This document shows positions 28,678-62,987 of a DNA stretch of 64,000 nt, piece after piece. The notes beneath the pieces are model-generated. The model did not search any database. It was not told the origin of the DNA and saw only the letters and a list, made by a program, of their open reading frames with translations. The translations under genes were made by a program, and so were the position numbers. The stretch spans positions 62,001 through 126,000 of the forward strand of contig NW_026921153.1 in assembly GCF_032062105.1 (NCBI RefSeq), given 5' to 3'. This stretch comes from Saccostrea cucullata (Eukaryota). Positions within the stretch are counted from its first letter, which is position 1; the number at the start of each line of letters is the position of its first letter.

Positions 28678-30599
28678 TCAAAAATAAATCCATAATATAG
28701 AATTGTAAGAAGACAATTCAAAAACTGTAGGTGCAATTGAGAATATTGTCTTTTGAAGAACATTCTTAGTCAATGACTCTAATATATCATAACAGCTTCT
28801 TTCAATAATGTTAATGACAGTATGAACTATGATATTGCCACCTTCTTCAAAGCAAGCAACAGCGATTGCAGATTTAATCTTAACTAATTTATCAGTGCTT
28901 GGTGGTAGAAGAGATGTTTCGTTTGCTTTGCATTTATTTACAATGTACAATAGCTTTTCAATTTGATCTTTTTGTTGCCTTTGCGTTTCAAAATTGTTTT
29001 CAAACACTGCTATTCTCCGTTCAACAGCTGTATATATATTGTATAACTCTTCTATAGCTTTCCAATTGAATACACCTTCTGCATTGTAGTTCTTGCCTTT
29101 CGTAATTATGATAAAACTTCTTTTATGAAAATGTCTTAAATGTTTCAAAAAAAGTCCGATACTTGAAATCACTTCCACTTGCATTCTTTGCGCAGGAATA
29201 ACAAAACCTATGATGTCATTTCCTGCAAGTGCTCGATGGATTTTCTTGGTCACCGGTTTTCTTAATGCTGGCGTGTCCACTAATGTAATGTTGAGATCCT
29301 TCACATGATACTCGGTAATGTCTTTTGTCGTAGATTCAGAACTGAGGCCTGATGTTGATGGAGCCACCTTCTCTCCTAATATGGTGTTAATTGTTGCACT
29401 TTTTCCAGCTCCTCGAGGTCCAATTAAAAACACCTTCAGGGGAAGTGAATCTAAAATGAGATTTTCTGGTTAATTCAAATGCTATAATGCTTTATTTTGA
29501 AGGGCTTTACCCAGGGATTCCGAAAAAATAATAATTTAAGACCTATTTAGCATTTGGCATTTTGAAGCATTCATTTGAAAAAAAGGTAATGTTCCTTTTG
29601 GTTAATTTCATCAGATTAAGTTGTGCCCAGAAAAAACTGGCCACCGAATGTGTACTTTTTTAGGCAATTTGAGCAGAGTTTTAGACGGAGGGAAAGATTA
29701 TATGATCTTCGTCGAATAAATTAAAGAAGGCATCGATATGTATATGTATCTCATTATTTTCAAAAAAAAGTAGTTAATTGTCTTTGATAAGGATAAATAT
29801 AAGATTTGTTACCGACTGAGGACAAACTACACAAAACCTTATAATGATGAAGGGGCGCCACAACTGTACCGTTATTTAGTGGTCTTTTATTTACTTTCAT
29901 ACATGTACGTCATTGAATCCAATGAATGTCTCCTACCTTCCGGTTCATGAATGTTAGAAAAAAAGGTATTTTCTGATCATGAATTATAGAAGTTTGCAAG
30001 GTGGAGAAATTATTTAGTTAAAAAATAAAACACAAAAGAAAAAAAAAAAACATTTCCCGAAATTTTGTCAATCATTTTCAACACAAAAAATGATAAATCA
30101 AAACTAAGCTATGTAGCTTAACTGTTCTATAATAGTAACTTGATCATTTCGATTTGACAGGCGCGGGTCATCAGATCAAAAAATACCACGAATCCAATAA
30201 ACAAAGCATTTTTACGACATGTTTCTGTGTACTACTTCATTAGAGTATGGTGGATTGAATTCAGAAAACCTCAATGTAATGAACAGAAAAGTCTGATCAC
30301 CCCGTAAAGTGATCATGCTAAATCAAAAGTAAAATTTAGTGCTTAACGGTTTGGTTTTTCATAATTTTTTGAGCAAAAAAACCCCCAGGCAGTTTTGTTC
30401 CCTAAAATGCTTCTGTCTGATAACTGTACTTAAAATGTACCAGTTACATATTGATGTATTAGTACACCTCCTCTGTCCACCAAGGGTAGATCGAAACCTT
30501 AGTCCGATATTACACATAAAGGATTTTTATCTGTCATCTCGACACTCTCTATATGGTTAACAGAAACTTACCCGAAACATGTGAACTCCCGCTATCCAT
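28678..30599 (-). CDS. AIG1/GIMAP-family GTPase-like protein, type A copy 1 (exons 30599-30572 and 29450-28678; ~266 aa)
   Basis: G1 GPRGAGKS, G2 SESTT, G3 variant DTPA, conserved box GFVIPAQR, G4 variant TKGK. A 28-nt first coding exon (MDSGSSHVS) with a GTAAGT donor splices in phase to the CATTTTAG acceptor; the paralog has the same structure. Confidence 0.85.
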
Positions 30600-31302
30600 T
30601 TCTCTAAATGTGTTAGCACTGGTTGTAGATGATATCATTGTCTTTCATCACTAATGATTTGCGCAAAATGTAGGGAAATTGTTTTAATAGGGTTTTCCTG
30701 TGTACATTGAAATACTTGATAAATAATATATGTAGATAACGAAGTGTGTAATCAAGCCTAACGTCCGTGCATGATTTAACGATAGAAATCGTGAGGAGAT
30801 CAAACACAGACCTCCATAACATCAGAGGCGGATCAGCTGCAGCGGATCGAAAAGACATTTTTTTAAGATTCAAAACTGATTTTTAACAGAATCGAAAATC
30901 TTTTTGAAGCCCGTTTCTTTTCTGTAGGCAATGGCCGAGTGTAGGGGTGAGATTGGCATGATTGGAAATAAGGTTTCTTAGTACTACCATCTATTCATAT
31001 TGTACCTTAATTGAACAGCGCTTAACATTGCGTAATTTTATTAATTAGTAATTTTTGACTTAACATTTACTACAATATCTTTGGGTTAATTTATGCAGAA
31101 TTATTTGAAGATACTTTTTTGAGATAAAAGAAAAAGTTGTACATTTATCATAAGTCTTGCTCAATGAAAAGTTAAAGTCATCACATTTATTATAAAGTTT
31201 GGTTGTTCAATTACCATTAACGTTTTTTTCTAAGTAAAAAAAAAATATCCAAATATGAAACTAATGTGTCAGACTCTGTGATGCTTTTCCTTCTAGTTCA
31301 CT

Positions 31303-31462
31303 TAAGGAATGAAGCTTATTTCAACTTATGTTATCCGATATAACATAACTTGGGGCAGTTTACGCTTTATAAACCGCGAAGCGGTTTACATACAAAAAAG
31401 CGTAAACTGCCCCTAGTTTTGTTATATCGGATAACATAAGTTGAAATTAGCTTCATTCCTTA
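31303..31462. repeat. Near-perfect 160-bp palindrome with CCGCGAAGCGG apex
   Basis: TAAGGAATGAAGC...GGGCAGTTTACGCTTT...CCGCGAAGCGG...AAAGCGTAAACTGCCC...GCTTCATTCCTTA. Confidence 0.92.
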
Positions 31463-31672
31463 TAATTTAATTCCAGTGTAGACAATGAGACAATATTTCC
31501 TCCGGAAAATGACTTCAAATTGAGCATTATTTTAAAAGTAACGTCAAGCGGAGTAATACATTTTTGACGTAACCCATTGTGACGTAGGCAAGTTATGTTA
31601 TCCAAAATATTATATGTTCCTCTGAATGATTCAGCCAATGAAATTGCTTGATACAAGTGAACTTAAATTATT

Positions 31673-31828
31673 TAAGGAATGACTCTAATTCTTGGCCATA
31701 TTATCGAGTATAATCTGGTTTGGGTCAGTTTACGCTTTATAATCCGCGAAGCGGATTATAAAAAAGCGTAAACTGACCCAAACCAGATTATACTCGATAA
31801 TATGGCCAAGAATTAGAGTCATTCCTTA
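31673..31828. repeat. Near-perfect 156-bp palindrome with the same apex and ends
   Basis: TAAGGAATGACTC...GGTCAGTTTACGCTTT...CCGCGAAGCGG...AAAGCGTAAACTGACC...GAGTCATTCCTTA. Confidence 0.92.
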
Positions 31829-34800
31829 TAATTTAATTTTGAAATAATTAAACAACTTTTGATGTAAAATTATGTTGCTTTTTATAAGTTCAAATTTACC
31901 GCGCAATAATACAACCGTAGTAACGGAAGTGATTTGAAGAGAGGGGAGGTAATAACTGATCTAGATCTAGCAGCCATGATGTTTGTTTACATGAGGTAAG
32001 AACGAGTAATTGTTTAAAGTTGAAGGTACATTGATTAAATCTGGAATTTTCCATGGATTCCGAGGACTGGAAATGACGGGATTGCATGGATATGATGATT
32101 AAGCTGGTCGTCAAGGGGGTGTGTCCCCATACCAAACCAGATTATACAAAATGTTATGCGTTCCTTTTTGGAAATCAACCAATGAGAGGCGAGAATACAA
32201 ATAAAATTAAATTATTAGGATATAACGTGTCAATATGTGAATGAAAAGAACTTTTGATAATTGATATACCTGAATTTCAAACTGAAGGCCACAGTAAGTG
32301 TTTTCTTTTCTCGTGTAGAAATTTACGAGGGGTGCTCAAACAGTTCGCGAACTATCTCTATATTTACAAAACCACGATTCAGATCAGAATGAAATTTGAC
32401 AGACATAGAGTCATACACATATAAATAGCATATGTAATGGAATATTTTGCTCCAAGTTTGTGACGTCACAATGTGAAAATGACGTCATAAGGTAGATCAC
32501 TTGTGACAAAAAATGGTTGACTCAGTCGTATTCGAGAAACGAACGGCTGTTAAGGTTAACATCATGACATTTTTCCCGATTCGATTTCAAGTACATCAGG
32601 AATCTATAAAAAGTCAAAAATAAGTATATTTCTCACTTGTGTCGTTGTGTAACATTTAAATTAAAATACTTAAATGTCAAGTGGTAAAGGACGGCATGCG
32701 ATTTCACTACAAATATCTAATTTAAAAAAGGAAACCTCTTCATAAACTGGCTAAATCTCCATAGCAAATTGAAATTAAAACCAACATTTACAATGTTTTA
32801 CACACATTTCAGAAAGTTTATGATAAAGATTCTTATGATATTTCTGAATTTTAGAATCCTGAACAAAATATCGATCAAGGTGAAGCTTTGCCATTTCTTT
32901 CCTTAAGTGTTTCTTGCAAGAACATGGGGAAATCTATCTTTGATTGATAACTTTATTATTTATTTGTCACGTTCATCTATCATAATGTTCCACTCATTTC
33001 TCGAGAAGTTTTGTCCTTAAACCTCGAAATTTTTTAATAAAAATCTCAGTTTTCGGAGTCTTTTGTTTCGTTGACAGATATTTAATTTGCTGGGTTTATT
33101 TCTATTTATAACGTGATGGTTTATAGATTACATTAGAGTTTCTCGACTTGATCCATTACTACGAAAGGTAAATAAAAAAAAACCCCATATATTTTGATTC
33201 CCTGTTTACACACCTTCATTTATGGTTTTGCTTTTGGTGTACATATACATATGAGGGGGTAATTGTTGTGATTATAAACACTATGATAAATTCAGAGATC
33301 TTGGTGTTTTTGTTATAATAATGATTAACACAACTTGACACAGACCATTTTCACTAATGCTTTGACCTAATACTCTTGTGTTACATCATACTCTTGTACA
33401 TGTATATATAGCAACGGCTTTTAATGTGTGTGTGTGTGGGGGGGGGGAGGTCCGACAAAAAATCTGCGTGCTAAAGAGCTGTGATACATGTGTACCATCA
33501 GATCTATGTTTCCCCCTGATAGATTTCTTCCGCATAAATCCACAACAGGTGTCACATCCTAGCCATTATGTGTTACATGTATCAAAGTAGCCAAATTTTT
33601 GAAACTGACAAAACTAAAGGCCGCTAATCGGAGATAAAATTTAACAATATTGCATTGAGACTACAATCAGTCATAAGTAGGCAGATCATTGTGGAAAATT
33701 TGAACAAACATACATAAGTATTCATTACACCCTATTAAAATTTCTTAATTGAATTTCGTTTAGACAAACATGCATATAGTCCACGTATAGCAGTCCTTTT
33801 TTAAAGGACAGCAACTTGTTTGTTATATTTGTGTTGCTTTCTGATGAGTTACCACAACTTACGCCATTCAACTGTCATTTTTAATGCAAAACAGTTTGCA
33901 CTATAGTTTTGACGTCAAGTACGGTGTTATCCATGGTAGTTCATGAGAACATGAACAAAATTCAAATTTGTAAGAAATGGCAAAGACAAATAAATAGAAA
34001 ATTAAGTATTAGACAATTAACTAAGATTGACCAAAGTAATGCCATTATAATTAATACCAATTCTACGTAAATATCAAAATGACGTGGCCACGCGATGTCT
34101 TCGATTCAGCTAATTTTTTTATTACTGAAACTTCAATGAATGAAAAGATTGACTATATGAAAGAAAGCATGGTAGTTTATCCGGTTGCCATGGAAACGGG
34201 ACTAGAAGGTGTAAATTATAGTGGATTTTGCTATTTATCAATAATATCAAAAAAATATTTACTAGACAAAGCTGTTTATGTTCATATTTTTTTATATCCT
34301 TCATGACAATCAAAACTATGTAAAAAATAGCCAAGGTCACAAAAATTTTACAATTTCTAATTTTCTGATGCCCAAAAAGTGAATAATTAGTCCTCGTTAC
34401 CTCCCTTGTTAGACTTAATATTTAAAGACTTTGACAAGTGATGTGAAAATTCTAGTAGGGAGATTTAGATTCAAGAAATGTTATTTTGCAAATATCATTT
34501 AAAACATTTATGGGTAAATGAAAAATAAACGTTTTATTACACTATAAAGTTGGTCTAAATGTGCTTTTTCTCTATCCGAGTTATTTCCCTTGTTGGAGCT
34601 CTTCGGCATTGAAGAATACAAAATGTGTAAATTGTAAACAAGATGGCAGACAATGAAATCTGCAGTTTTTCTTCTTGTTTTGAAACATCTTGTTCAGGAA
34701 AATTCTACCTCAAGAGACTCAGAATTTGATGAAAAACAGTTGACAAAGTTGGGATAATCTTTAAGAAAAGCCATAGAGTTGATCTGGACATGATGAGTAT

Positions 34801-38100: not shown

Positions 38101-38247
38101 GAAGTTCTATTTAATTATTGAAAAGAAATTTAAATACTTGACATATGTTCATACTACATAACAATTTGTTCAGTTTGGTAAAACATGTTGTTAGATGATC
38201 TTCTCTGTTATTTGTGATTAATGGAGGGGGGGGGGGGGGGGGGTCAT

Positions 38248-38964
38248 TCATGCAATAATTTCTAGAAAGCTGTACATTTACCCATTAATTTATTAATTTT
38301 TTTTTATTCTCACAAAACATTAGAATATAAAGTTTATTTAATGATACATGGTTACAAATATATCGGTTGTCAAAATGGTGAATAATTCCATTGAATATGA
38401 CTAAAAAAGTCAATTTTGGCAAATTGCCAATTTTCATGCAATAATTTCTAGAAAGTTTTTGATTTACCCATTAATTTTTTTTATTCTCATAAAACCTTAG
38501 AATATATAGTTTATTTAATGATACATGGTTACGAATATATCAGTTGTCAAAATGGTGAAAAATTTCATTGAATATGACTAAAAAAGTCAATTTTGGCAAA
38601 TTGCCAATTTTCATGCAATAATTTCTAGAAAGTTTTTGATTTACCCATTAATTTTTTTTATTCTCACAAAACCTTAGAATATATAGTTTATTTAATGATA
38701 CATGGTTACAAATATATCAGTTGTCAAAATGGTAAAAAATTTCATTGAATATGACTAAAAAAGTCAATTTTGGCAAATTGCCAATTTTCATGCAATAATT
38801 TCTAGAAAGTTTTTGATTTACCCATTAATTTTTTTTATTCTCACAAAACCTTAGAATATATAGTTTATTTATTGATACATGGTTACAAATATATCAGTTG
38901 TCAAAATAGTGAAAAATTTCATTGAATATGACTAAAAAAGACAAATTTGGCAAATTGCCAATTT
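38248..38964. repeat. 177-bp tandem repeat, 4 copies
   Basis: Units start TCATGCAATAATTTCTAGAAAG at 38248, 38434, 38611 and 38788; a poly-G tract precedes the array. Confidence 0.95.
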
Positions 38965-40223: not shown

Positions 40224-42919
40224 GCTCGCCTGATTGCTGGGATGCAAGTTCAAAGATTGTCGCCTATTCCTCAGTTAGCCGTGATGATCGTTCAAAACAG
40301 CGTAAGTGTTTTCTTTTCACTGTTCTGTTTTATCTTGTAGAATAATATCATGGTGTACAAGGGGTCACAAAAATACCATAGAGTACTTTAATAAAAATTA
40401 AAACAAACAATGACTATCGAAGAAATCCGCAAAATTGTATCTCGCGGATTGATTAAAAAATGTGTTTCTTCAAAATTATAATTCTAAATTAATCTTGTTA
40501 GTGATATTTATTCTATGAGCTATTTTAAGTAGGATGATCACAGACCTATAATCTCAGAGGTCGAATCAGCTGCCATGGAGAATAAACATCCTCTTTTAAT
40601 TGGTTACACGATTCTACCTTTTTATCATGATAGGTTAAATCTTAATTACATAAACTAGTATATTAATAATTACAATGAATCTTTTTATGTAGGAAAAACA
40701 TTTGTAAAAAAACCAGGTTTAACTTACCTTTTTATGAATTAACACGTAGCCAAAATCTCAAGGCAATTTTTCAATTTTCTAGTATTGTGGAATGTGGGTA
40801 TTTTTTTCAATTCTGTGTTTTTATGGCCTAAATCAATTTGAATAAGATATCATTTACAAATAACAAACTATACTTATTCAAAATGTGTCATATGATTTTC
40901 AAATAGAAATAACGATGAACTAAACTTATTTGAAGCTAAATCTTGTCCTTTTCATTTTTTTTTCTCCAGAAAATGAAGATCACCACACGCTGCCTTCAGG
41001 CGATTCCACAGATATACAGGTTGATGTATTAGACGGTGTGTGAATAAAGATTTTGTGTGTATCATGTCTTTTCAATCGAGTTTATTCAATTATTCATTGA
41101 TATGGGTTTTTTTCCTTTTTGTTTTATAAATTGACTAAATGTGTAACATTACAGAAAATATAAAGTATTCTATGAATTTTTAGGGAATTATTTAGTCGAA
41201 TCCTCATATGCAAGTTGTAATAATTACACTTTTTCACTCAAAAATCAAATGTTAGGGAGTAGAACATAAGGGGATAATTCATATATTTTTTCCTATTTTT
41301 TTCACTTGATGTATCATTAAAATATCTCCCGATAAGTCAGAAACTGAAATGTATGGAGATAATGAACGGTATTGAAAGTCCATTAAATAATACAAAATAG
41401 GAGCAGAGAAAACATAATAAAAAATGGAAGATGAGGTTCTGATAAAAGTGTCTACATCGTCTAATTGCACTGCTTGACATATTCCACGAATTCTTATTAC
41501 CCTTCCCATAAAACCACGAGTTTTTTGATGTCTTTGTTCGTAAAGTCGGTAATTATTATTTACCATCTGCTTTTTTAGTAATAATATAAATAGGATGACC
41601 CCCAAAGGGAGTATTTGATTGGTTGAAAGTGAAAGGTAAGTTAAGACCTGTATTAAGAAATAGAGCATTGCCCTATTCTTAATACAGTTAAAATTACGAG
41701 ATTCGAAAAATCTTATGATACACTGTATTAAGAGTGTATACACGGTAAGATTTTGTATTGATTTATAATACAAATTTTATAATAAAAATCTTACCGTGTA
41801 TACCGGCCTAAACACACCTGGCCATGCAGAATAATTATCATACCGCGCTAAAAATCGGTATTCAATTTGTCCGCACAGTCAGGTGTGTTAAAGGACAGAC
41901 GAAATTCCCAAATATGAATTCATTGCTTAAATAATGACTTTTAATTCAGTATTATTTTAGCTTTAAGGTCAGATGACACGTTCCTGGCCTTAAAAATGAT
42001 CATTATGCCATTTTCCCCTGATTTCTTTTTGCCTTTTCCCTGTCTTTATACCTATATTGTTTTCGCAATAATTTGATACTAAGGGCCTTCGATTGTGGGA
42101 TATGAAACTATTTTCGGTATTGGGAAAAAAAGACTGCACTTATTCTTTATATCAATACAAAATATATCTCTAATACATTGTATCATGATTTCAGATGATG
42201 ATGAAAATTGTCGAATGCTGATAGCTGGTCTTACAGGTGTAGGCATAAGCGCCCTAACCAACTCTATTGCCGGAAGTGAAGTTCAAGTATCTAAAAGCTC
42301 ACCGAGATCTGTTACTCAAAAAGCCTCTCAAATAAAATGTAAAAGAATGGAAAGATTGCTAGTATGTTTTGACACACCTGGAATGTCTACGATTGATGAC
42401 ACAAAAATAGTTCAGGAACAATATGAGAAATGTTTGATCAAAGCCGCTCCTGGATTTCACGCCATATTAGTCGTGCAAAAAGCTACAAGCTTCTCAGATC
42501 ACAACGAAAAATTCCTAAACAATATCACAAAGATGTTTGGGGAGGACCTATGGAAATTCGTTGTGTTTGTCTTTACTCATATTGATCAAATAGGGGAAAA
42601 TTTGGAGGAAAAAATAGCAAAGGGAGACAAGCGCTTGCACTACTGGCTTCACAAATGTGAACACCGGTACGTGGGAATTAATAACAGGGCAAAAGGGGAA
42701 GAAAATGAGCAGCAAATTTCAAAACTGCTCGACGTTGTGGAGAAGATGAAACGGGTGAATGTTGATAAGATATACACCAATGAGGACTTTAAGAAAACCT
42801 ATAATATGCTGAAGATTGCTGCACGTGACTTAAAGGTGTCCGTTCAAAATATCCAGGACAATCCAGGAAAAATATTAGGATTTACATTAGAAGTATTAAA
42901 ATATTTTAATAACCCTTGA
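40224..42919 (+). CDS. AIG1/GIMAP-family GTPase, type B copy 1 (exons 40224-40301, 40970-41035, 42195-42919; start exon not located); Walker A Lys replaced by Ile
   Basis: G1 GLTGVGIS, G2 SVT, G3 [14 protein letters not shown] box, MFGE, G4 THID, GINN. Two symmetric phase-1 upstream exons have canonical AG/GT sites and are conserved in copy 2. Confidence 0.85.
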
Positions 42920-44840: not shown

Positions 44841-46941
44841 CTAAAATCTAAAGACATCATCACTGATAGGACTATAATAAATCCATGATGTAGGAAGTAA
44901 AATAGCATACTCGAAAGGTTTGCTAGAAGGTAAGATCTTCTGTAGAACATTAATTAACACCGGCTCTAAAGAAACAGAATTAATACGTTCAAAAGCAGTG
45001 CAAAGTATGACTTTGCAAATTTCATTTATAAAAGCTACAATATGAGGTTCAATTGCAGATTTAAAGCTAACTAACATGTCAATGATTGATGGTGGAGGGG
45101 TATATTCTTTGGCTTTACATTCATTTACAACAGACATAAACCTTTCGATTTGATCTTTTGTCTGCTCTTGCGTTTCAAAATCGTTTTCAAATACCACAAT
45201 TCTCTGTTCAACAGCTGTATATAGATTGAATAGCTCTTCTATAGCTGTCCATTTGAAAAAATCCTCTTCACGATAGTTTTTTCCTTTCGTAATTATGATA
45301 AAAGTTTTTCCAAGAAAATGTTTAAATTTCGTAAGAAAAATCCTGATGCACGATATTTCTTCCTCCTGTATTCTTTGTGCAGGAATAACAAACCCTATGA
45401 TATCACTTCCTACTAATGCTCGATTCAGTTTCCTAATTACAGGTCCTCTCAATGCTGGGGTATCCAATAATGTAATGTTGAGTTCTTTCACAGGATATTG
45501 AGTAATGTCTTTTGTTGTCGATTCGGAACTAAGACCAGTCGTAGATCTGGCCACATTCTCTCCTATTATGGTGTTGATTGTTGCACTTTTCCCAGCACCA
45601 CGTGGTCCTATCACAAAAACCCTCTGGGGAACTGAGATGGAAAGTAGAATAATTGTTTTATTAATTAAATATGTATTTCATCTGCCATGTGCCATTTCGG
45701 TTGCAACCTCCATAAAATACAAAACAAAACCTTCATAAAAATGTTTCTTGACAGTGGATTACAATTTATTAAATATTTTGCCATGCAATTAAAGTTTTCC
45801 CATAACACAATGTTGTATAAATATAATACTTTACATACATTAATCGTACATGTATATACATTTTATATGATGCATATAGACTTTTTTATATATATAGAAT
45901 AGAAAGGGCTTTACTTATCCAGGGGGAAAAGATGTAGAGCTTAAGAGCATGATGCTTAAAAATACATTTAAGGGTAACATCTGTCAAAACACATTTAAAT
46001 TATGGGCAAAACTTGCATAAATTGAAGATGTTCATATCCGCCAAAAATAAAGGTTTTTTATATGACTTCTATAATGTTGAATCTCAGTCAATTCAAGAAC
46101 TTAAAATCATTTTATTAAACATTTGTTGATTTCTCACTATAGAGGTCAAATATGTGTTTACGGAGTGGTATTAAATATCATATCGCAGCGAGACGTTCGT
46201 TTAGTTACCGTTCTTTACTCACACTTGTTAACTCTCATAGCTCTTCATGTAAGAATGTCACATTGTTTAGTAAAAGAACATATTATGTAATGATTTTATG
46301 CAAATTATTTAAACACAATAATGTATCTATATTTTTTAATTAATATTGAGATGGATTAAATGAAAAGAATGCAGTCCTCGTAAGAGGAACATTGTAAAAA
46401 TATTAAATACATTGTTTTGCAAATGTGGACGATGTCCTGATAAAAAACGAAGTAAAATTATCTTATAAACTTATAAATTTTTTCAATATCCATATCAATA
46501 TCATCTTTAGCGTTTGTTGTAAATCACACAAATATTTTGTATCATCTTTTGTAGGAAGAAATTTTGAAGCCATTTCCCTTGCCTATTAGATTACTTCAAT
46601 AACTAATTATTTATTGGTGTGCAGTGAAATGAAAGGAGCCATTCTTGCACAACAGATTTATGTGAAATATGAATAAAGGGAAATTCAGACAATTCATCTG
46701 TAAGCAAGGTATTTGGATCTTGTCGTGTATCAAACTTCATACTAGTAACTTATAAAGAAGAAGGGTAACATTTAACGGTTTGTTTGAAAACAATTTACAT
46801 TTTTTTGCTTAACGGGTCTCAGAACCCAATACATGTTCAGCACACTTTCCCCTGGTCCCCAGCAGAAATAAATAGGATTCTTATTTATTCCTCACGATTT
46901 ATCAAAGACTTACCCAAAACATGTAAACTCCCGGTATCCAT
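44841..46941 (-). CDS. AIG1/GIMAP-family GTPase-like protein, type A copy 2 (exons 46941-46914 and 45631-44841; ~272 aa)
   Basis: Same motifs as A1 (GPRGAGKS, DTPA, GFVIPAQR, TKGK). A 28-nt first coding exon (MDTGSLHVL) with a GTAAGT donor splices in phase to the TCCATCTCAG acceptor. Confidence 0.85.
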
Positions 46942-47500
46942 TTCACTGAAAGCATTGGTAATTATTCTAGATACCATTGTAGTATTTATCACGTGACTCT
47001 GTACATAGCTTTAAATATGGAGAAAATATGAAATATGCCCTGTGCTTATTGAATCACTAAGTAAATATTTACTTGTTAGTGTGCAACGAAATCAAAGGAA
47101 CTGTTTTGGCGCAACAAGCAAACTTGTTTTTGCTTGCATAAGACCCAAAACGGAATTTGAATAGCATATTTTTAATTTGAAACCGCTTCATATGTTTTAG
47201 GCCATGGCTGAAAGTAAAGAAAATAAAGGTGAGTTTATGGAAGGAATGGAATGGCTTCTAATTTATATCTAATTACTCAAAATGTCTTTCCAACAAAAAA
47301 GAATTGATAGTATTTGATACAAACGTCCATCTATCTCATTATGATTTTGAAATATTTGCCTCCTAGCGGATAACCATGAATTTAATATTTTCCTAATACT
47401 CATTTCACAAAGGTTTTTTATATTGTGTACTGAAAAAAACGTTCCAATGCATTGTCGCTTTGCACTAGCACGTTGAATGGTAATTGTAGATAGTTTTGTA

Positions 47501-50694: not shown

Positions 50695-50752
<58 letters not shown>

Positions 50753-51932: not shown

Positions 51933-52798
51933 GCCCATCAGACTGCTGGGATGCAAGTTCTAAGATTGTCGCCTATTCTACACAATCAAATCAGCATAAG
52001 CGGTTTTTTTTTTATTTCAAGAGGTTGGTATTGAGAATGTTTTGTTAAGTATACATTCAGTATCTAATCAGATAGCATAATAAACAAGAGGCACATGGGC
52101 CACATCGTTCACCTGAGCACTGTGGCTAGGAAAAAAGCAGAAGTCAGTTTATTATTGAAAAGTTTAATCCCAAAGGTGGTCTTAACCAATCCTCAAAGGG
52201 AAGAGGGTATGATTTGAACAAACATGAATCCATACTAACTGAAGATGCTTGCATATTTCTTTGACAACCTGTGGCTTGATTGCCCTTTACATTTGAAATT
52301 ACATTGTGGCCCCGCCTTGATCACGGGGGTCATCATTTGACCTAAATCTACACTACCTGAGGAATCTTCCATATAAATATGATCATTAATGTCTTTGCTA
52401 TTTTTGTGAAGAAGATTTTTAAAGAATTTCCCTATATATTTCTATATAAATATTTGACCGGCCATTAAGGCACCGCCCTACCACCGAGGGTCATGATTTG
52501 AATAAGTGTAAATCTACACTACCTGAGAATGCTTCCCTATAAATTTCGTTTTTCCTGGCACAGTGGTTCTTGAGAAGAAGATTTTTTAAAACATACCACC
52601 AAACTTTCACCATTTCAAAATTATCACCCCTTGAATAAGGGCGTGGACCATTATTTGATTAAATTTGAATCCCCTTGACCCAAGGATACTTTGTGCCAAG
52701 ATTGGTTAGAATTGACACAGTGATTTTAGAGAAGAAGTCAAAAATGTGAAAAAATTACAGACAGACAGACTGCCGCCGGAAAAAATGTGATCAGAAAA

Positions 52799-52832
<34 letters not shown>

Positions 52833-55441
52833 TCAAAACAAAAGGGGGTCGGTGCTCTTCTTTTAGCGCTACGGAGAAATTACTATGACCTTTTAGCACT
52901 GTAATTACGTCTAACACATAAATGAATTTTTCAAACTTTTTCCTTTAATTTTTTTATCGTAATGAATAATTGGAACAAACACACTGTCAGTCTTGTTTCA
53001 TTTTGAATAGTCACATTAAAATTTGTGACAACGGAAATAGTTTCTTTAAATCATAACACAAAGTCACTTGTTTGACCTTTATGCATTCTAAAAATGTTAT
53101 TTCCTGGCGTTAAAAATTTTAAAAGCAAGAAAAACATTTGAAATTTTTTTTTCTGAATTTAAACAGAATGGATACATTTATCTTAGATAGTAAGAAAATG
53201 AAATAAAAGGTGGGGTCTCTGATGTTAATTTTAGATATATCTAAAATAATGTTAATTTTAAGGTTAAATTGGGCTATTTTTACACCAAGACTTTCACGAT
53301 AAATCCTATATATTTGCCTTTGATGATAGAATTCATGACACTTAATTTAGTATATAATTTAGGAGCAGCACAGAACATTTCACTGCTCAAAATTAGCCTG
53401 TATGCAGGCTGTATGTAAAAATAGGAATCCTAACTTCACAATATTTAATACTTTGAAAAAGAAAAATTGATTTCCTTCCGCCTCAACATATAATTCATCG
53501 GTAAATGTTTTTGGTATGGAATTTAATCGTTGGTGTTAAGGTCAAGATCTAGTAAATAACTGGAGACTCATTTTTTGGTGCTAGATCCATTATGACGTCA
53601 CAATCAATTTCAACTTTCTTTTTCTCGTACTTGACGGCTTTAAAAGAATCATGTAGAAAATTTGGTATTTTCATGTCATTCAATTTGAAATCAAATGAAA
53701 AGTAAACCGGATACCTATATCAAATTTGATTTTGATTTAAAGAAGAGGCCATGAACATAACTAATTACCGTTTTCTGAGAGTCTGTAGGCAATCTGAATA
53801 CATCTCCTTTGTCGAATACGAAAAATTTCCCATATTCAAGACTGGTTTTCTTAATTTTTCTTTGAAAATGACAGTTTAAAAGTCAGTTTTTCATCTTGTT
53901 TACCTACACAGTATGCCCCCAGAAACACCTTATTTGACCAAGCTAAAGTTGTAAAGCATCAATAAATTAACATATTTCTCAAGTTTAATAAATCTGTAGG
54001 CATCTTTCATTTTCTAGATCTTGACCTTAATGTGATATAGTTTAATTAGCATTATAGAATCCAAATTTATGTTAAGAACTAAAACATTATGTATAAAGGT
54101 CAAGACAACAATTTTCGCAAAAGCTGAGGATTGAGCCTATTTAAATTCATCAAAAACAACATTTTTATTAGCATATTTTAATAAGCTGCTAATTCTGAAT
54201 TTGGACCATCTTGTCTGTTCTCATTGCTTAAGCTCAAGAATGATACATTGTAAACAAGAAAATTATATTTTTAAAATTCTGAAAAAGTCTAGATTCCATT
54301 ATCTAAGTTAATATACAATAAAGTTAAATGGGAGGATAATGAACAGTGAATATTTTCAAATATCGTATAAAAAATAAGATTGTGAGGCAAAGCAAATATG
54401 GACCTCTGAAATAGAGGCGAGAAAAGGTGCCATTGAGATTAAGCAACCCGCGTTGACCGGTCGCACTTGCCATGAGCTTTTTGTCATGCATAAACGGTTA
54501 AACGTGAAGTTATAAAATATATTTAAATTTACGAAGTATGCAGAGATGAGGTTCGGTACAAGTATCAGGTTCATCTTGTATATAAAATATACTGGCTTAC
54601 CTTTTGTGAATTTCGATATGAAACATTGAGGAAAGTGGATATTTTTTTTTAAATACATTGTTAGGCCTTCATATCTAGGAATCAAAATCAGTGCTTGTTT
54701 TAAATCACAAATCATATCAATTTCTAAATCAGACATTATTCTAGTTCAAAATATGTCTTGAAGTTTGGCTCATATTTTATCTTTTTTTCCTCTAGAAAAT
54801 GCAGACCAACAGCAGATGCCTTCAAGCGACACCGCGAATATACAGATCAATGTTTTAGATGGTGTGTAAATGAAAATTTATTTCTAGTTGTGTTTAGCGT
54901 ACACATTATACACCATTAACTTAACTGACAGCATGATGAAAACACCAGATTATATGAAAGAACAATACAATAAAACATGTTAAAGGTCACTTGTATCATT
55001 TAAATGACTATATACTATTTATTTTTTTACGACGATTCATATACTTGAAGTAAAACATGTTAAAGGTCACTTGTTTTTTCCTTTGAATCGTGATCACAAT
55101 TGCAAGATGTTCCATTTTTCTCCTCGATGGTATAAGAAAGTTTTACACACTCTTGCATCCTTTTTCACCACTAGATAATTCCCAGTGTATATGCTTGACA
55201 CTGTGGAATTCATCTTCGTGCATTTTAAAGAGTCATTTTTGTTCTACTTCTTTAAAGATTTCTTAAGAAACAAACGACAGCTTTGAAGGAAATTGCTGTC
55301 TCAATGTTTATATCAAATTAAGTCTCAGTGCAATATTTCGCTCCACCTCCTCCATCCGCCTTTATGTTGTCTTGGGACGGTCTCGCTTCCTCCTCCTCAG
55401 CAATTTGTTGGGTCCTTTCTCAGCAAATGATCAATCAATCA

Positions 55442-55504
<63 letters not shown>

Positions 55505-58500
55505 CACTAAAATGACCAACGACACGAACAATAAAAATTGTCAAATTTTCGGGACGCCCTGTCCCTTCCTCAGGACAAAGAAAAAAGTTAAAAAGTCATA
55601 AAAACAAAGGAAAAAGAGAAACAAAAAGAACTAGCACTACTACTAAACTACTAAACACTAGATATTTACATAATTACATGTTGAATAGGAAATATTAAGA
55701 AAGAAATCCGGACCGCTTTGAAATGCGTCCGGTCTATCGGGTATACTCGGGTGAAGTGCGATTTACATAATTGAACGAATTAATTATGCTAATTATTACG
55801 ACAATCAGTAAATCGTACATTGTTTCATTTTCTCAAAATGGCGTAACTATACTTGATAAAGAATAATCAAAGAAAAATAATATAGAAGGGGCATTATAAC
55901 ATATGAATTATGATCTATTATAAATTTTAATTTGAAATGTTTTAGGACTAATTATCGGTAAAAAATAATTAATTAACAAAAGCGTAAGGAATACATAATT
56001 ATGTGGGTTGTTCTAGAGTTGGTAACGCAAATTAACTGTAGAGTTTACACTAAATTGAGAGATTAATCTTGTTTGGTATCATCAGGAATCGGGTCTAGTT
56101 TACTTGAGAACCCCAAAAATCAATAAAAACTGATCACCGGGTCTCCAATTTACACACCTACTTAGAGTGTAACATTATACCGAAAGGCTTTCAGATAAAT
56201 GTTACACCTAACATAGGGCCAATCTCCAAACGCTTTCAGGAACGCTGGGACGTTATTACAGAGATTTTCTGAACAATTGATGTCACTCTGTCTTTCTTAG
56301 GATATCCACAAGTTTGGACAATTGAAGAGTGAGATCGAGTCCTTAGAATCATCCCTCAACGATATCATGTCCAAGACCGATCTTGATGAAGCCCATAATA
56401 TTATAGACACCTATAATATGGCCCTAACAAATAAAGTCAACAAGACTCAAAGAGAGAAATTTCTCCGCGACAGTGTTCCACAGTCAAGGAACAACTGGTC
56501 AGAGGTCAGAGTTAACAAAACACGTAAACCCCGCTCGAGACGCTTCAAACGCATGAAGACAATCGCGAGGGACGGACCCATACAAACTCCTGACGTCTGC
56601 CCAGTGCTCGATAAATCCAGTGCTCCTCTCTCCGAATTGGAGACCTCACTTCTTTCCAAGGGGCTGAATTTCTGCCCCATGCCACAAGAGGTCGACGAAA
56701 AACAAGTCAGAGAGGACACCCGAGCATTCTTCCGGAGACATCGTTTGAAGGAGCACGTACTTCTCTAGAAAAGACTCCGACGAAAATTCATACGACTCTT
56801 CCAAGCCAGATTTAAACGATCTAGAGGAACACAAACTCTATAGACCCAAGAGTGACTGGGAACCTGCACAGGGCAAGTGTGGCGCGCTTGAGTCGTATAT
56901 TGACGCCGTTGAGTCAGACATAGAGAAGCTCCTTTCAATGCCAGACAAGATTCCCGACAATTTGAGTAAGGAAGAGAGATCTGCCTTACAATCATTAAAA
57001 AATCGGGATGACATTGTAATCAAGAAAGCAGATAAAGGCTCTACAGTTTTTACTGGATAAAGAGACTTACATGGTGGCGGCCCAAAGACAACTCTCAGAC
57101 GAACGTTTCTATAAGAAACTGGACTCTGACCCTACTAAAGAATTCTCCACCGCCATTACCAAAACTGTTGACGATATGTTTTTAAAAAATGAGATTGGTA
57201 TCAAAGTCTATGAGACCTTAAATCCTATTGACTGTAGACCAGGACAATTCTATCTGCTTCCTAAAATACACAAAGAAGGCATGCCAGGTCGCCCCATAGT
57301 CTGCGCAGTTGGACACCCCACGGAGAAAATTTCTGAATTCAATGATTTCCATCTCCATCCACACGTAGAGAATTTGCCATCCTATCTCAAGGACACCACG
57401 GACTACATTAACAAGACGCCCTCTACTGGCCTACCAGATCATACCCTCCTCGTGACTATGGACGTGAGTCACCAATTTTCCGCACGATGAGGGTATCGAA
57501 GCCTGTAGAGAAGTCTGGGATAGTAGGTCCATACAAATTCCTTCTACCGAGTCCCTTGCCAAGCTCCTTGAACACGTTCTCAAGTTCAACATCTTCATGT
57601 TTAATGGAGAACATTATCTACAGGTTAATGGCACTGCTATGGGTACGAAAATGGCACCGTCTTATGCCAATGTCTTCATGGGCAGACTGGAATGCAACAT
57701 GTTACTTCAAGCACCATTTAGGCCCCATAGCTGGTTGCGTTTCATTGACGATATAGAGATGAAGTGGGTGGAATGTCGGGAGAGTCTCGAGGCATTCATT
57801 ACTTTTGCCAAACACCTTTCATCAGTCGTTCAAATTTACAGTAGACGTATCTAATTCGAAAAACGTATTTCTAGATACCACATCTACCCTGATTGATGGT
57901 GAAATCGAATTCAGTCTCCACACCAAACCCACAGACTCCCACTTGTATCTTATACCCACTAGCTGTCATCCCCCACACACATTTAAGGGAGTGCCTAAGG
58001 GTCTAGCCACCAGAATTCGACGCATCTGTTCGTCCCCTGGCTTATTTCAGGAGCGAAGTGGTCTTCTTGAGTCCCACCTATGCAAAAGAGGCTACAATGC
58101 CCGCAACGTACAAACAGGTATTGATGAGGTGGCGGGACATGACAGGCAAAACCTATTACGTTACAAGGAGAAAGACAATAGCGGCAGGGTCCCTCTGGTT
58201 ACCATATTCCATCCCGTCCATAAGAACCTAAGCGGTATCCTTCAAAAGAACCTACCAATTCTCCATTCAAACAAACGAATGGCAGAGGTCTTTCAGGAAC
58301 CCCCATTGGCTGCATACAGACGCCCTAGGAACCTAAAGGACATGGTAGTAAGAACCAGACTGGACAACCCATTACATAACGGGGGCTTTAAAACTTGCTC
58401 TGACAGAAGATGTCTTCTTTGTAAGCACAGCACTGACACAGATGATTTTAACAGCCCTGTTACAGGCCGCAGCTACACAATACTAGGAAATTTGTCCTGT

Positions 58501-61500
58501 CATACTGACAACTGCATTTATCTCATCAGTTACAAAGGTTGTTCCAAACAGTATATTGGTGAAACAGGAGATCTCCGCAGGAGAGTCAACAACCACCGTT
58601 CGACCATTAGGACCAAAAAACTCACTGAACCCGTTGGGGAACATTTCAACCTTGACGGTCACAAATAGAAGGACATGACAGTAGTGGTGATTGACCATAA
58701 CCCAAGATGGACAGACGCTCAGAGAAAAAGCAAAGAAAAGTTCTGGATGCACAGATTGAAGTCATTCCGCCCCAATGGTATTAACAAACTGAATGACTTC
58801 ACCAGAATGAACGTAAACTAGACCAGATTCCTGATGATACCAAACAATATTAATTTCTCAATTTAGTGTAAACTCTACAGTTAATTTGCGTTACCAACTC
58901 TAGAACAACCCACATAAATATGTATTCCTTACGCCTTTGTTTATTAATTATTTTTTACCGATTATTAGTCCTAAAACATTTCAAATTAAAATTTATAATA
59001 GATCATAATTCATATGTTATAATGCCCCTTCTATATTATTTTTCTTTGATTATTCTTTATCAAGTATACTTATTTATATGAATAAAAAAAAATCAAGTAT
59101 AGTTACGCCATTTTGAGAAAATGAAACAATGTACGATTTACTGATTGTCGTAATTAATTAGCATAATTAATTCGTTCAATTATGTAAATCGCACTTCACC
59201 CGAGTATACCCGATAGACCGGACGCATTTCATAGCGGTCCGGATTCTTTCTTTAATAGTGTTCTTAAAAATTTCCAAATCATGTAACTAAGTAAATATAT
59301 AGTGTTTAGTAGTTTAGTAGTAGTGCTAGTTGTTTTTGTTTCTCTTTTTTTTCCTTTGTTCTCATGACTTTTTAACTTTTTTCTTTGTCCTAGGGAAGGG
59401 ACAGGGCATCCCGAAAATTTGACAATTTTTATTGTTCGTTTCGTTGGTCATATATTAAGTGCTTTATATAAATTTCCATCCGTGACCTTGTATCTACTTG
59501 GTAGATCCGACATTTAGGATATACAGTGTTGTTGGTTTAATTTAGTGCTTTATGTATATATATTCCTCCTCACCTAGCAAAGGAAGCTTTCTGCATCTGT
59601 CATCTCCAGAACTGTCTTGTTAAGGATATGCTGCTGCCATTTGACCTCGAGAATTCCTCTGAGGCACTTGGTCTGAGAGATGTCAATTTCTTTTCTTTTC
59701 AATTGGTAAACTTCCAAGTCTTACATCTGAATAAAAATACAGAGAGGACCAGGCTCTTGAAGAGTGAGACTTTTATCTTTCTACTGATGTCTGTGATCCA
59801 GATGTTGGCTAGAACTTAAGGGATGCAGCGGCCAGTGCTATCCTCTTCCTGATGTACGCAATACCTCCAACATCCTTAGTGACAGTGAACTTGTCCACCT
59901 CGTCAGTTTCACTGTTTCCGACTTTCAGACCGGCTTCACTCTCGTTGTTTATCTCCATCACTTTGCACTTTTTGGCATTCAGCTTCATTTCAACTACTTT
60001 TGTTTGGACTTCTTCAAAATTTGTTGACTTGGACTGAAGACGGTTAATTGCTGATGAAAGTAGGGCAATGTCGTCCGCAAAGTGAAGGTCTTCAATCATA
60101 GTGGTGAGGTCCCATCAATTTCATGTTATCTTTTCTCTAACAGCCTGTTGCATCACCCAGTCTATCACTAGGAGGAACAAGAAACCTGACTTACAGCATC
60201 CTTGTTTGACACTAGTCATCACAGGAAAAGGGTTGTGGTTTCATTGTCATCAATCAAAGGATACTCAAAATCGTGTTATAGGGCTTTGACCAACGTAATC
60301 AGTTTTTGGGTATTCCAAATTTCGTCATGATGACGCAAAGGCTGTCTCTGTGATTATAGTTGAAAGCTTTCTCAAAGTCCACAAAATGAATTTACGGGGT
60401 AGGAATCCACTCCTTTGCTTGATCCTGGATGTTCCTTGGGAAGTAGATTTCATTCACGGTCCCTCTCCCGCTCCGGAACCCTGCATGCTTTTTCCTAAGT
60501 GTTTGTTTTTATCAAGGGATGGAGTTGCTGTAGTCCTGTAAGTTGCTACCCTTGGGAATTTTGCAGGTGAGTCATTTGGTCCATACTTTGGGCACCTTCT
60601 CATCCTTCGCTATGGGGTTAAAGGTGTGCTTGAGTTTCTGGCTTGTATAATTCTGGTCTGTCTTTAACATTTCTGATGTTATTTGATCTGTTCCAGGGAC
60701 TTTCCCCTTCCGAAATGTCCTCAGTGTAGCCCTTATTTTTCTGTGTGTGGGGTGGATTAAATGAGATGTCCAGCACTTCTCCCTCCTCCTGTTTATTTGT
60801 GGTGGTGACTTTGGAGTGTCCCTGTTAAGCGCTTCCTCAAAATATTTCCTCCATCTGGCAAGCCTCGCTATATTTTTCAGCAGCTCTCCTTCTTTGCTCT
60901 TCACCGCTGCTGTTTATGTATTGATCTTTATTGTCAGCTGTTTTTCTATGTTGTACAGTTCTTTCTGCCTCTCTATGCTGCTCCCTGTGCTCAGCTTTTT
61001 CTGCCTTCAATCTCCTATTGTCCTCTCTCACACTCTTCTTGGTCTTTTTGGATTTGTCTCTGTAATTTTCCTTCAATTTAGTCTTGATTCTTTCTGATCT
61101 TGTCTTGTGCTCTCTATTTTTGTCTTGATGTATTTTCCTTCGTCTATCAACTTCCAGGTGTTTTTGCTGATGCAATGCTTGCCTTTCCTGAAGCCAAGTA
61201 CTTCCTCTGCTAAAATCAGAGAAAATCCTTCTGCTGCTTGTACTTATACTTGTGTGTTCCGAGGCATAGACTTATTCGGGTCTTCCCAAGGTAGTGGTTG
61301 CAACTGGCATCCGCTCCACTCTGGGCCTTCAAGAACAGATGATCTCCACTGATGAGAAGGTTGTCAATCTGGTTTTTTCGTTGTTCCAGTAGCAGACACA
61401 CAATGTTCCTGTGATTACAAGCCCGTTGGTCTGACAAAATTCACAGTCTTTCTCCATTCTCGTTTGTGTTCCTAGTCCATGGATACCCATATTTCTTTCA

Positions 61501-62987
61501 TACCCTTTATTGTCACTTCCTACCTTGACGTTAAGTTCCCCCATCAAATGATGTCTTTTTGGTGCATCCATCCAAGGTCGTTTGTAGCTTCTGGTAGAAT
61601 TGATCTTTCTCCACCTCTTCCTTTCACAATGTGGCGGATATGTTCTCCTGTATTATATAAAGAATCGTGCTACTACTGAATACACGGAAATTTTCGCCCC
61701 TAACGTCCTTGCCTGACGGGGGCAAATTCAAGGTAAACTGTATAATATCTTAAACAAAAATCTTTTTGGGTGAATTTAAAATGGGGCAAACTTGTTTTAA
61801 GATGTGAAAGGGCGAATATAACACGGGGTGGAAATAACCCTGTATACAGTATTAATCTCACGCTGATGGGTACTGTACAGCAGGAAATTAACTCGCAGAG
61901 TTAATTTTCGCTAGTATCCATTCCATGGATGATTCCCTTACCTGCTGGCTGATCATTAGGGCAATTCCTCTCTTATGCAGTTCTTCATCCCCGCGGTCAT
62001 ATACTTACATATAACAATACTTACATGTAACCTTAGTAAATGATAACGTTTAATAATGCAGTTCTTTATATACTAGAAACGATCCCTAGATTTTTTAAAA
62101 TTATTATTATTATTTTTTTTTTTTTTTTTGATAAAGATAAAAAAGAAAAAAATTTTAAATTTTATGTTCATTCGATTTAAATATGCCCTGATAGAGGAAG
62201 ATAGAAATAATTTGTATCATTTCTCCATTGAAATGTAGCCTTATATTTGTTTTTCATGATAGACGATGAGGATAACTGTCGAATGCTGATAGCTGGTCTT
62301 AGAGGTGTAGGCAAAAGCGCCCTAACCAACTCAATTGTCGGAAAAGAAGTTCAAGTATCTAATAACTCACTGGAATCTGTGACACAAAAGGCATCTCAAA
62401 TAAAATGTAAAAGAAAGGAAAGATATCTGGTATGCTTTGACACACCTGGTTTGTCCACAATTGATGACACAAAAATGATACAGAAACAATATGAGAAATG
62501 TTTGATCGAAGCCGCTCCTGGATTTCACGCTATCTTAGTCGTGCAAAAAGCTACAAGCTTCTCAGATGACAACGAAAAGTCTCTAAACAAGATCACAGAG
62601 ATGTTTGGGGAGGATCTATGGAAATTTGTTGTAATTGTCTTTACTCATATTGATCAAATAGAGGAAGGTTTGGAGAAAACAATGCTAAAGGGAGACAAGC
62701 GCTTGCACTACTGGCTTCACAAATGTGAACACCGGTACGTGGGAATTAATAACAAGGCAAAAGGGGAAGAAAATGAGCAGCAAATTTCAAAACTGCTCGA
62801 TGTTGTGGAAAAAATGAATCAGGTGAATGGTGGCAAGATATACACCAATGAGGACTTTCAGAAAACCTATACTATGTTAAAGATCGCTGCACGTGACCTA
62901 AAAGTGTCCGTTCAAAATATCCGTGACAATCCAGGAAAAATATTGGGATTTTCATTAGAAGTATTAAAATATTTTAATAACCCTTGA
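51933..62987 (+). CDS. AIG1/GIMAP-family GTPase, type B copy 2 (exons 51933-51995 with mutated donor, 54796-54861, 62263-62987)
   Basis: G1 [26 protein letters not shown]. Exons are paralogous to B1, with identical 66-nt and 725-nt lengths. The last intron is 7.4 kb and filled with retroelements. Confidence 0.85.
52082..52832. mobile_element. HINE/Helentron-associated non-autonomous element with satellite-like core
   Basis: AAACAAGAGGCACATGGGCCACATCGTTCACCTGAG start, internal ~160-170-bp related units (AAATCTACACTACCTGAG), (ACAG)n microsatellite, and CTCACTTGAGCTTTCAGCTCAGGTGAGCTAAAA terminal hairpin. This architecture is typical of oyster elements. Confidence 0.8.
53540..54026. mobile_element. 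TTAA-target MITE (Kolobok-like termini)
   Basis: TTAA|GGTCAAGATCTAG ... CTAGATCTTGACC|TTAA. Confidence 0.75.
55328..55440 (-). mobile_element. 3' fragment of the RTE LINE, separated by the Penelope insertion
   Basis: Minus strand encodes [12 protein letters not shown] and [13 protein letters not shown], matching the RTE C-terminal motifs WIGHVLR...GRPKxTW. Confidence 0.7.
55501..59560 (+). mobile_element. Penelope-like retroelement (Neptune-type; RT then C-terminal GIY-YIG), frameshifted, with ~600-bp inverted arms
   Basis: RT motifs [47 protein letters not shown]; Zn linker CSDRRCLLC; endonuclease NCIYLI..YIGET..H..EHF. Arms 55501-56103 and 58813-59465 are inverted. Flanked by (TA)n. Confidence 0.93.
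55538..55578 (-). ncRNA. Minimal type I hammerhead ribozyme-like motif in the PLE arm
   Basis: Minus strand TTGTC-CTGAGGA-A-GGGAC(AGGGC)GTCCC-GAAA-ATTT-GACAA: stem I, CUGANGA core, stem II, GAAA and a palindromic AAUU stem III. The second copy (59385-59425, plus strand) has a mutated core, CTAGGGA. Confidence 0.65.
59561..61640 (-). mobile_element. Decayed RTE-clade non-LTR retrotransposon (APE endonuclease plus RT)
   Basis: [16 protein letters not shown] and NQIDNLLIS (APE); [14 protein letters not shown]; [14 protein letters not shown] (RT). Many frameshifts. Confidence 0.9.
61674..61851. mobile_element. Tc1/mariner-like MITE, same family as 48386-48597
   Basis: TACTGAATACACGGAAATTTTCGCCCC ... 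CCCTGTATACAGTA. Confidence 0.65.

What the first reader, a model, noticed from the sequence alone, without database searches (positions are those of the whole stretch)
28678..62987. Head-to-head GIMAP pairs with reciprocally complementary catalytic motifs: candidate obligate heterodimeric GTPase switch
Seen: gene order is <-A1 B1-> <-A2 B2->. Aligned without gaps to the GIMAP conserved box (PGPHxLLLVxxLGR), both A proteins keep the Arg (xGxDIIGFVIPAQR), while both B proteins have Ser there ([14 protein letters not shown]). Conversely, B keeps G3 DTPG and G4 THID, while A has DTPA and TKGK. Established: in human GIMAP7/GIMAP2 the conserved-box Arg is an arginine finger acting in trans across the G-domain dimer. 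Inference: A is a pseudo-GTPase that donates the finger as a dedicated GAP or sensor, and B is the nucleotide-binding partner that cannot self-activate. They would be co-regulated from a divergent promoter and duplicated as a unit, reminiscent of paired plant NLRs. I am not aware of this split being described.
Basis: partly seen in the sequence, partly recalled or inferred. Interest (0 to 1): 0.88.

Follow-up and report, generated by a model that had tools for sequence, protein, structure and literature searches.

The report
Head-to-head oyster GIMAP gene pair
In oysters, two very different immune GTPase genes sit back to back about 200-370 bases apart and have been copied together repeatedly; one usually keeps the 'trigger' arginine that the other has always lost, which suggests but does not yet show that they work as a two-part switch.

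Summary
The window (Saccostrea cucullata) holds two A-B GIMAP units. An overlooked micro-exon puts each B start codon 292 and 226 nt from its A start codon. The same layout occurs in Crassostrea virginica (3 units) and Magallana gigas (2 units), 215-367 nt apart, and spliced Magallana transcripts confirm both first exons. Copies group by genus, so the unit expanded separately in each lineage. B lacks the conserved-box Arg in 51/51 sequences but keeps the G4 Asp; A keeps the Arg (50/51) with DTPA and a variable G4 acid position. A keeps G1, G2 and the G3 Asp, so 'pseudo-GTPase' is over-read. B1 itself has a broken P-loop (Lys to Ile), two A copies elsewhere have lost the Arg, about 80 other GIMAP domains could donate one, and both clades share an unusual P-loop Arg. 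Heterodimer control is known (GIMAP7-GIMAP2, GIMAP6-GIMAP7); I found no report of a linked, motif-split pair. No dimer, co-expression or activity was tested.

The parts
28678..29450 (-). A1 exon 2: AIG1 G domain and moderately hydrophobic C-terminal extension; G1 GPRGAGKS, G3 DTPA, G4 TKGKN
   Evidence: matches annotated protein P0002
29185..29187 (-). A1 conserved-box Arg codon (putative trans arginine finger)
   Evidence: register from the A2 alignment to GIMAP7
30572..30638 (-). A1 exon 1 with start codon
30639..30930 (.). 292-nt interval between A1 and B1 start codons (putative bidirectional promoter); holds a ~115-nt interspersed repeat at about 30725-30841
30931..30946 (+). B1 exon 1: 16-nt coding micro-exon with start codon and GT donor, orthologous to the first exon of Crassostrea/Magallana B
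   Evidence: orthologous exon is spliced in Magallana mRNA contigs
40224..40301 (+). B1 exon 2 with a WDxS..I/V..YS motif resembling that of Crassostrea/Magallana B
40970..41035 (+). B1 exon 3
42195..42919 (+). B1 exon 4: AIG1 G domain; conserved box has Ser (42488-42490) for Arg; G3 DTPG, G4 THIDQ
42227..42250 (+). B1 degenerate P-loop GLTGVGIS (Lys to Ile at 42245-42247; Arg to Thr at 42233-42235)
44841..45631 (-). A2 exon 2: AIG1 G domain; conserved-box Arg at 45372-45374, G3 DTPA, G4 TKGKN
46914..46977 (-). A2 exon 1 with start codon
46978..47203 (.). 226-nt interval between A2 and B2 start codons (putative bidirectional promoter)
47204..47228 (+). B2 exon 1: 25-nt coding micro-exon with start codon and GT donor
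51933..51995 (+). B2 exon 2 homologue; the position homologous to the B1 donor reads AT, so it may be skipped (phase 1-1, frame kept)
54796..54861 (+). B2 exon 3
62263..62987 (+). B2 exon 4: AIG1 G domain; intact G1 GLRGVGKS, G3 DTPG, G4 THIDQ; conserved box Ser at 62556-62558

Best explanation
A and B are two distantly related GIMAP subfamilies held head to head on one short bidirectional promoter throughout the sampled oysters (shown for layout; co-expression inferred). They most likely form a G-domain heterodimer that works one way (inferred). B binds GTP with an intact cis site but has no finger, so B-B dimers would stay GTP-loaded, as GIMAP2 and GIMAP5 do. A, probably the membrane-associated partner through its hydrophobic tail, inserts its conserved-box Arg into B's site and turns B off. 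B cannot return the favour, so A's own nucleotide is not hydrolysed in the heterodimer. A is better read as a nucleotide-binding partner with a stiffened switch II (DTPA) and relaxed guanine read-out than as an empty pseudo-GTPase. Pairing is between subfamilies rather than within one unit: recent duplicates that lose the finger (two A copies) or the P-loop (B1) would act as inert or inhibitory variants.
For: Layout: start codons 215-367 nt apart in 7 of 7 called units, three genera; spliced mRNA contigs begin within that interval on opposite strands in Magallana. Copies cluster by genus with 99-100% bootstrap support, so the pair expanded together in three lineages. Purifying selection between genera, dN/dS about 0.1-0.3 with saturated dS. 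Asymmetry: B has seven different non-Arg residues at the finger column and an invariant G4 Asp (51 sequences, 16 non-redundant); A has Arg in 50/51, invariant G3 Ala, a variable residue at the G4 acid position and a near-invariant Asn at the next position. That next position matches GIMAP6 D167, needed for heterodimer contact (PMC9111091; spacing checked in two other mammal GIMAPs). Sister paralogues of B mostly keep the Arg and most sister paralogues of A keep G3 Gly, so both changes are derived. Both models are GIMAP folds (A1 Z 20.1, rmsd 2.8, 175 aligned; B2 Z 28.0, rmsd 1.9, 206 aligned, to GIMAP2). GIMAP7 is reported to activate GIMAP2 by supplying an arginine finger.
Against: No dimer model, binding, activity or co-expression data. 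81 of 97 GIMAP domains sampled in this genome keep the Arg and could serve B; 16 lack it, so loss alone is not special. B1 lacks the P-loop Lys. The finger is lost in C. virginica unit 1 A and M. gigas unit 2 A, and the latter is linked to the B most often seen in transcript assemblies. A and B share only about 25% identity, and A lacks part of the switch II helix, the PGPH part of the box and the helix after the G domain, so the interface may not be compatible. Human GIMAP6 keeps its conserved-box Arg yet inhibits GIMAP7, and its R134D mutant still inhibits. Both clades carry an unusual P-loop Arg that offers another route to catalysis.
Confidence: 0.42

Rival explanations
1. Regulatory heterodimer of the opposite sign or a scaffold: A and B bind each other, but A caps, inhibits or anchors B (or B caps A) without lending a catalytic residue, like GIMAP6 on GIMAP7 or the GMS-type IRGM proteins on GKS-type IRGs (the IRG comparison is from my own knowledge).
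For: Same linkage evidence. GIMAP6 does not bind GTP, keeps an Arg and inhibits GIMAP7 through the G interface (PMC9111091). Finger-less A copies arose twice with open G-domain frames and a P-loop-dead B arose once. In septins, loss of the finger after duplication is proposed to go with hetero-oligomer assembly rather than with a dedicated GAP (10.1101/2024.03.25.586683).
Against: Retention of the Arg in A across saturated dS, while the neighbouring box residues and G4 drifted, is easier to explain if the Arg is catalytic.
Confidence: 0.23
2. Co-regulation only: an old inverted arrangement left two GIMAPs sharing one promoter, which cannot be split without losing expression. They act in the same response but do not depend on each other; B is a slow GTP-bound scaffold or is triggered by any of the many canonical GIMAPs, and A homodimerises.
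For: Bidirectional promoters are commonly conserved (general knowledge; literature listed). About 80 other Arg donors exist in the genome. Unequal copy numbers: an orphan third A in M. gigas, a double-domain A in C. virginica. Discordant dS between A and B duplicates. A promoter this short forces duplicates to carry the neighbour's 5' end.
Against: Whole B genes span 8-22 kb yet were copied intact with A in three lineages. Both clades gained Arg at the same P-loop position, rare elsewhere in the family (6 of 97 domains, four of them A or B), which hints at joint evolution.
Confidence: 0.22
3. Relocated finger: the Arg at P-loop position 3 (GxRGxGKS), present in both A and B, has taken over transition-state stabilisation in cis or in trans, making the conserved-box Arg dispensable in B. 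B would then be self-sufficient or need a partner only for positioning, loosely like the P-loop Arg of GBP1 and atlastin.
For: This Arg is conserved in nearly all A and B sequences and absent from both sister paralogue groups. B1 lost it together with the P-loop Lys.
Against: In GBP1 and atlastin the catalytic Arg is one position later (own knowledge); position 3 corresponds to Ras Gly12, where a large side chain hinders catalysis (own knowledge). One M. gigas B and one transcript variant lack it with the Lys intact.
Confidence: 0.13

Closest known systems
Human GIMAP7-GIMAP2 heterodimer (Schwefel et al. 2013, as cited in PMC9111091, PMC8201404, PMC8066113)
   Same: Same fold and G-interface; an otherwise silent GTP-bound GIMAP is switched off by a partner that supplies the conserved-box Arg.
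   Different: GIMAP2 keeps its own Arg and has the deviant G3 (DTPD); here the presumed acceptor has lost the Arg outright and the presumed donor has the deviant G3 and G4. I found no report of the human pair sharing a bidirectional promoter or duplicating as a unit.
Human GIMAP6-GIMAP7-GABARAPL2 complex (PMC9111091)
   Same: A degenerate GIMAP regulates an active one through the G interface.
   Different: GIMAP6 does not bind GTP and inhibits; its Arg is not needed. A keeps G1, G2 and the G3 Asp.
Septin R-finger loss after duplication (10.1101/2024.03.25.586683)
   Same: Homologous Arg in a sister GTPase family; species with several paralogues often have one with and one without it.
   Different: No gene linkage described in the passages read; the proposed outcome is heteropolymer assembly.
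Paired head-to-head plant NLRs (RRS1/RPS4, RGA4/RGA5, Pik-1/Pik-2; own knowledge)
   Same: Two diverged paralogues of one immune NTPase family on a short shared promoter, inherited together, with unequal motif conservation.
   Different: Different protein family; no integrated sensor domain was found in A or B (for a B N-terminus); sensor-helper roles are untested here.
Lineage-specific mollusc AIG/GIMAP expansions (PMC7053062)
   Same: Large, clustered, birth-and-death family; divergent neighbours are common.
   Different: The passages read report no conserved two-subfamily unit or split of catalytic motifs.

Membership tests
GIMAP/AIG1 GTPases | AIG1 domain above the Pfam cut-off | tested here: met
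   A1 55.1, A2 58.6, B1 138.1, B2 150.7 bits against cut-off 27
GIMAP/AIG1 GTPases | GIMAP fold closer than Toc34 or other GTPases | tested here: met
   top nine matches are GIMAP structures for both models
GIMAP/AIG1 GTPases | G1 Lys, G2 Thr, G3 Asp | tested here: inconclusive
   met in A1, A2 and B2; not met in B1, whose G1 Lys is Ile
GIMAP/AIG1 GTPases | Conserved box with Arg | tested here: inconclusive
   A has the Arg but not the PGPH part; B has the PGFH part but no Arg
GIMAP/AIG1 GTPases | C-terminal coiled coil (required by the strict definition of PMC7053062) | not tested
   no coiled-coil predictor run; B2 model ends in three short helices, A tail is low-confidence and moderately hydrophobic
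Pseudo-GTPase (A) | Loss of residues needed for nucleotide binding or catalysis | tested here: inconclusive
   G1, G2 and G3 Asp kept; G3 Gly to Ala fixed; G4 acid position variable (Ser, Asn, Asp, Lys)
GIMAP7-GIMAP2-type trans-activating heterodimer | Physical G-interface heterodimer | not testable with these tools
   the structure tool folds single unaltered chains only
GIMAP7-GIMAP2-type trans-activating heterodimer | Arg-dependent stimulation of the partner's GTPase | not testable with these tools
   needs biochemistry
Head-to-head (bidirectional promoter) gene pair | Opposite strands, 5' ends under 1 kb apart, conserved | tested here: met
   start codons 215-367 nt apart in 7 units; mRNA contig 5' ends fall in that interval in Magallana
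Head-to-head (bidirectional promoter) gene pair | Co-expression | not testable with these tools
Paired NLR-like sensor/helper system | One partner carries a sensor domain and represses or licenses the other | tested here: inconclusive
   no extra Pfam domain in A, B or a B N-terminus; functional relation untested

The most novel reading that the evidence does not exclude
A and B form a dedicated, co-transcribed, one-way GTPase switch: a GIMAP that has specialised as the GAP (and membrane anchor) of a finger-less partner, with both having co-evolved a P-loop Arg, inherited and amplified as a cassette like paired NLRs, and spawning finger-less or P-loop-dead variants that tune the response. It would be, as far as my searches reach, the first genetically hard-wired GTPase-GAP pair within the GIMAP family.
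Probability: 0.3. Interest if true: 0.82.

Novelty: new variant of a known kind. Interest (0 to 1): 0.62.

Why it matters
GIMAP function is poorly understood even in mammals, and the idea that the family is controlled by which member dimerises with which rests on a few human pairs. Here the genome itself nominates a partner pair among about 140 loci, conserved across three oyster genera, with natural loss-of-finger and P-loop-dead variants as built-in controls. That makes the heterodimer model directly testable with two small proteins, and it points to a paired architecture for invertebrate immune GTPases in farmed species. It was easy to miss: the database proteins identical to this window's B genes lack the 5' exons.

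Tried and rejected
So expression in Saccostrea is untested. Spliced models were not searched as joined sequences; exons were joined only in a local script to check reading frame. No human sequence was fetched; human GIMAP registers come from the alignments printed by the PDB search. The primary GIMAP2/7 structure papers were not held, so the Arg-finger mechanism is cited second hand. Ostrea edulis A-like gene context was not on record. No true A or B orthologue was found outside Saccostrea, Crassostrea and Magallana; the searches are length- and word-limited, so this is not proof of absence. Flanking synteny with Crassostrea was not found in the DNA held. Rejected: tail-to-tail B1-A2 (1.9 kb) as the real unit, because the orthologous units are all head to head; misalignment of the box, because HMMER and the 106-sequence alignment agree; pseudogene status of the clades, because frames are open and dN/dS is low. 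Paper searches for a described pair or for these accessions found nothing. Earlier scan findings held nothing on this pair.
Full report
Source and observation. Database proteins identical to the A genes are named Saccostrea cucullata; the assembly is 1.17 Gb and has about 140 AIG1 matches. HMMER alignments to solved human GIMAP chains place the A Arg and the B Ser on the conserved-box Arg column with no gap in the box. One fact was left out: B1's P-loop is GLTGVGIS, with the Walker A Lys replaced by Ile and the third-position Arg by Thr. Only B2 has an intact set of G motifs.

Gene structure. A1 and A2 each have a short first exon 1.1-1.3 kb upstream of the G exon, with start codons at 30638 and 46977 on the minus strand. 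The database proteins identical to B1 and B2 cover only the last exon. Comparison of the two units and of orthologues shows three further B exons, all phase 1, and a coding micro-exon at 30931 (B1) and 47204 (B2). The start codons of A and B are therefore 292 and 226 nt apart. B2's exon 2 has no GT at the position of B1's donor and may be skipped in frame.

Conservation of the layout. C. virginica has three tandem units, each with A and B starts 215-223 nt apart. M. gigas has two units (367 and about 265 nt) and a third A with only a decayed B first exon; in unit 1 the partner is a called AIG1 gene with the B-type first exon, but its G exon lay outside the DNA fetched. M. angulata has the same first exon beside its A, without a called gene. 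Transcript contigs from Magallana are spliced from these first exons and start inside the interval on opposite strands. A third Saccostrea B lies on contig C8509, which ends before its first exon, so its partner is unknown. In codon trees the A copies and the B copies each group by genus with 99-100% bootstrap support: the pair expanded separately in three lineages, or copies are homogenised. In this window dS is 0.69 for A1/A2 and 0.23 for B1/B2, so a single clean duplication does not fit without later conversion of B. Between genera dS is saturated and dN/dS is about 0.1-0.3, so both genes are old and constrained.

Motifs. Among 97 G domains sampled from this genome, 81 keep the conserved-box Arg, 92 keep G3 Gly and 95 keep the P-loop Lys. 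B-type sequences never have the Arg (51 sequences, 16 non-redundant; Ser, Thr, Val, Ile, Glu, His, Ala) and always have the G4 Asp. A-type domains have the Arg in 50 of 51, DTPA in nearly all, a variable residue where the G4 acid should be, and Asn one position later in all first or single domains. In human GIMAP6 the residue 33 after the box Arg, D167, lies at the heterodimer interface (PMC9111091); that spacing lands on this same G4 position in two other mammal GIMAPs. So, by inference, A conserves residues that act across the dimer and relaxes one that reads its own base, and B does the reverse at the finger. A and B are distant clades. A's sister paralogues (C3727, C13053) mostly keep G3 Gly, and B's probable sister group (GIPG P-loop) mostly keeps the Arg, so both changes are derived; the B-sister link is weakly supported and flagged for long branches. 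Both A and B have Arg at P-loop position 3, which neither sister group has and which only two other domains in the genome share.

Evidence that limits the claim. A keeps G1, G2 and the G3 Asp; GIMAP2 has DTPD and still binds GTP (PMC8201404); a Gly to Ala change at this place in Ras-type proteins uncouples switch II rather than abolishing binding (own knowledge). The finger is lost in two recent A duplicates that remain linked to normal B genes, C. virginica unit 1 (Thr; annotated as a 107-residue product, though its G exon is open) and M. gigas unit 2 (Ser, also seen in transcripts). With B1, this suggests that recent duplicates often shed catalytic residues, either through relaxed selection or as inhibitory variants. 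About 80 other domains could donate an Arg to B. GIMAP6 shows that a degenerate GIMAP with an Arg can inhibit instead.

Mechanism. Shown: linkage, conservation, repeated expansion, transcription in Magallana, motif asymmetry. Inferred: co-expression (likely), A-B heterodimer (about 0.6), A as one-way finger donor (about 0.4). Rivals: inhibitory or anchoring heterodimer, co-regulation without contact, and a finger relocated to the P-loop.

Comparison and novelty. Both genes are members of the GIMAP/AIG1 family by domain and fold. Trans-activation between GIMAPs is known (GIMAP7 on GIMAP2), and finger loss after duplication is known in septins. I found no description of a linked GIMAP pair with split motifs, within a library that lacks most subscription papers. 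It works like the GIMAP7-GIMAP2 pair by hypothesis and is arranged like paired NLRs by observation; it is not shown to be either. Verdict: a new variant of a known kind, real and well suited to a direct test, with the mechanism still open. Interest 0.62.

Noticed in passing
window 55493-59473: Penelope-like retroelement remnant in the last intron of B2: GIY-YIG endonuclease ORF (57805-58668), upstream ORF pieces, and long inverted flanking repeats about 89% alike.
   Followed up: partly
window 21590-22111 +: Single ORF with a hydrophobic N-terminus, a DAN cystine-knot domain and an Arg/Gly-rich tail.
   Followed up: no
window 7781-8516: Tandem repeat of a 33-nt unit that gives long spurious ORFs on both strands.
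   Followed up: no
window 38247-38964: Tandem array of a unit of about 180 nt in the first intron of B1.
   Followed up: no
window 30725-30841: A short interspersed repeat with at least 39 other copies in the genome sits inside the A1-B1 promoter interval.
   Followed up: partly
G000 contig C3727 (L003, L004, L040, L107, L114): Sister paralogues of A (two) and probable sister paralogues of B (three) share one 188-kb contig; most members of both groups end in CaaX-like motifs. The one B' start codon located (35631) has no A' G exon nearer than 40 kb, so a head-to-head pair is not shown.
   Followed up: partly
L027 (G000 contig C16717): A GIMAP with the P-loop GKSGCGMS, the Lys to Met change typical of regulatory IRGM proteins (IRGM comparison from own knowledge).
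   Followed up: no
L061 (C18424), L081 and L101 (C8332), L113 (C1544): Another clade of Arg-less GIMAP domains, some lying 2-7 kb from an Arg-bearing domain on the same strand, possibly multi-domain genes with a similar split.
   Followed up: no
L124:11810-13659: C. virginica unit 2 A has two tandem A-type G domains, the second with altered G1 and G4.
   Followed up: partly
P0098 / P0233 (Ostrea edulis LOC125662370): An A-like G domain (DTPG, Arg kept) behind a long acidic N-terminus; genomic context not retrievable.
   Followed up: partly
G000 contig C10461:12857-13428: Broken A-like paralogue in two frames.
   Followed up: no
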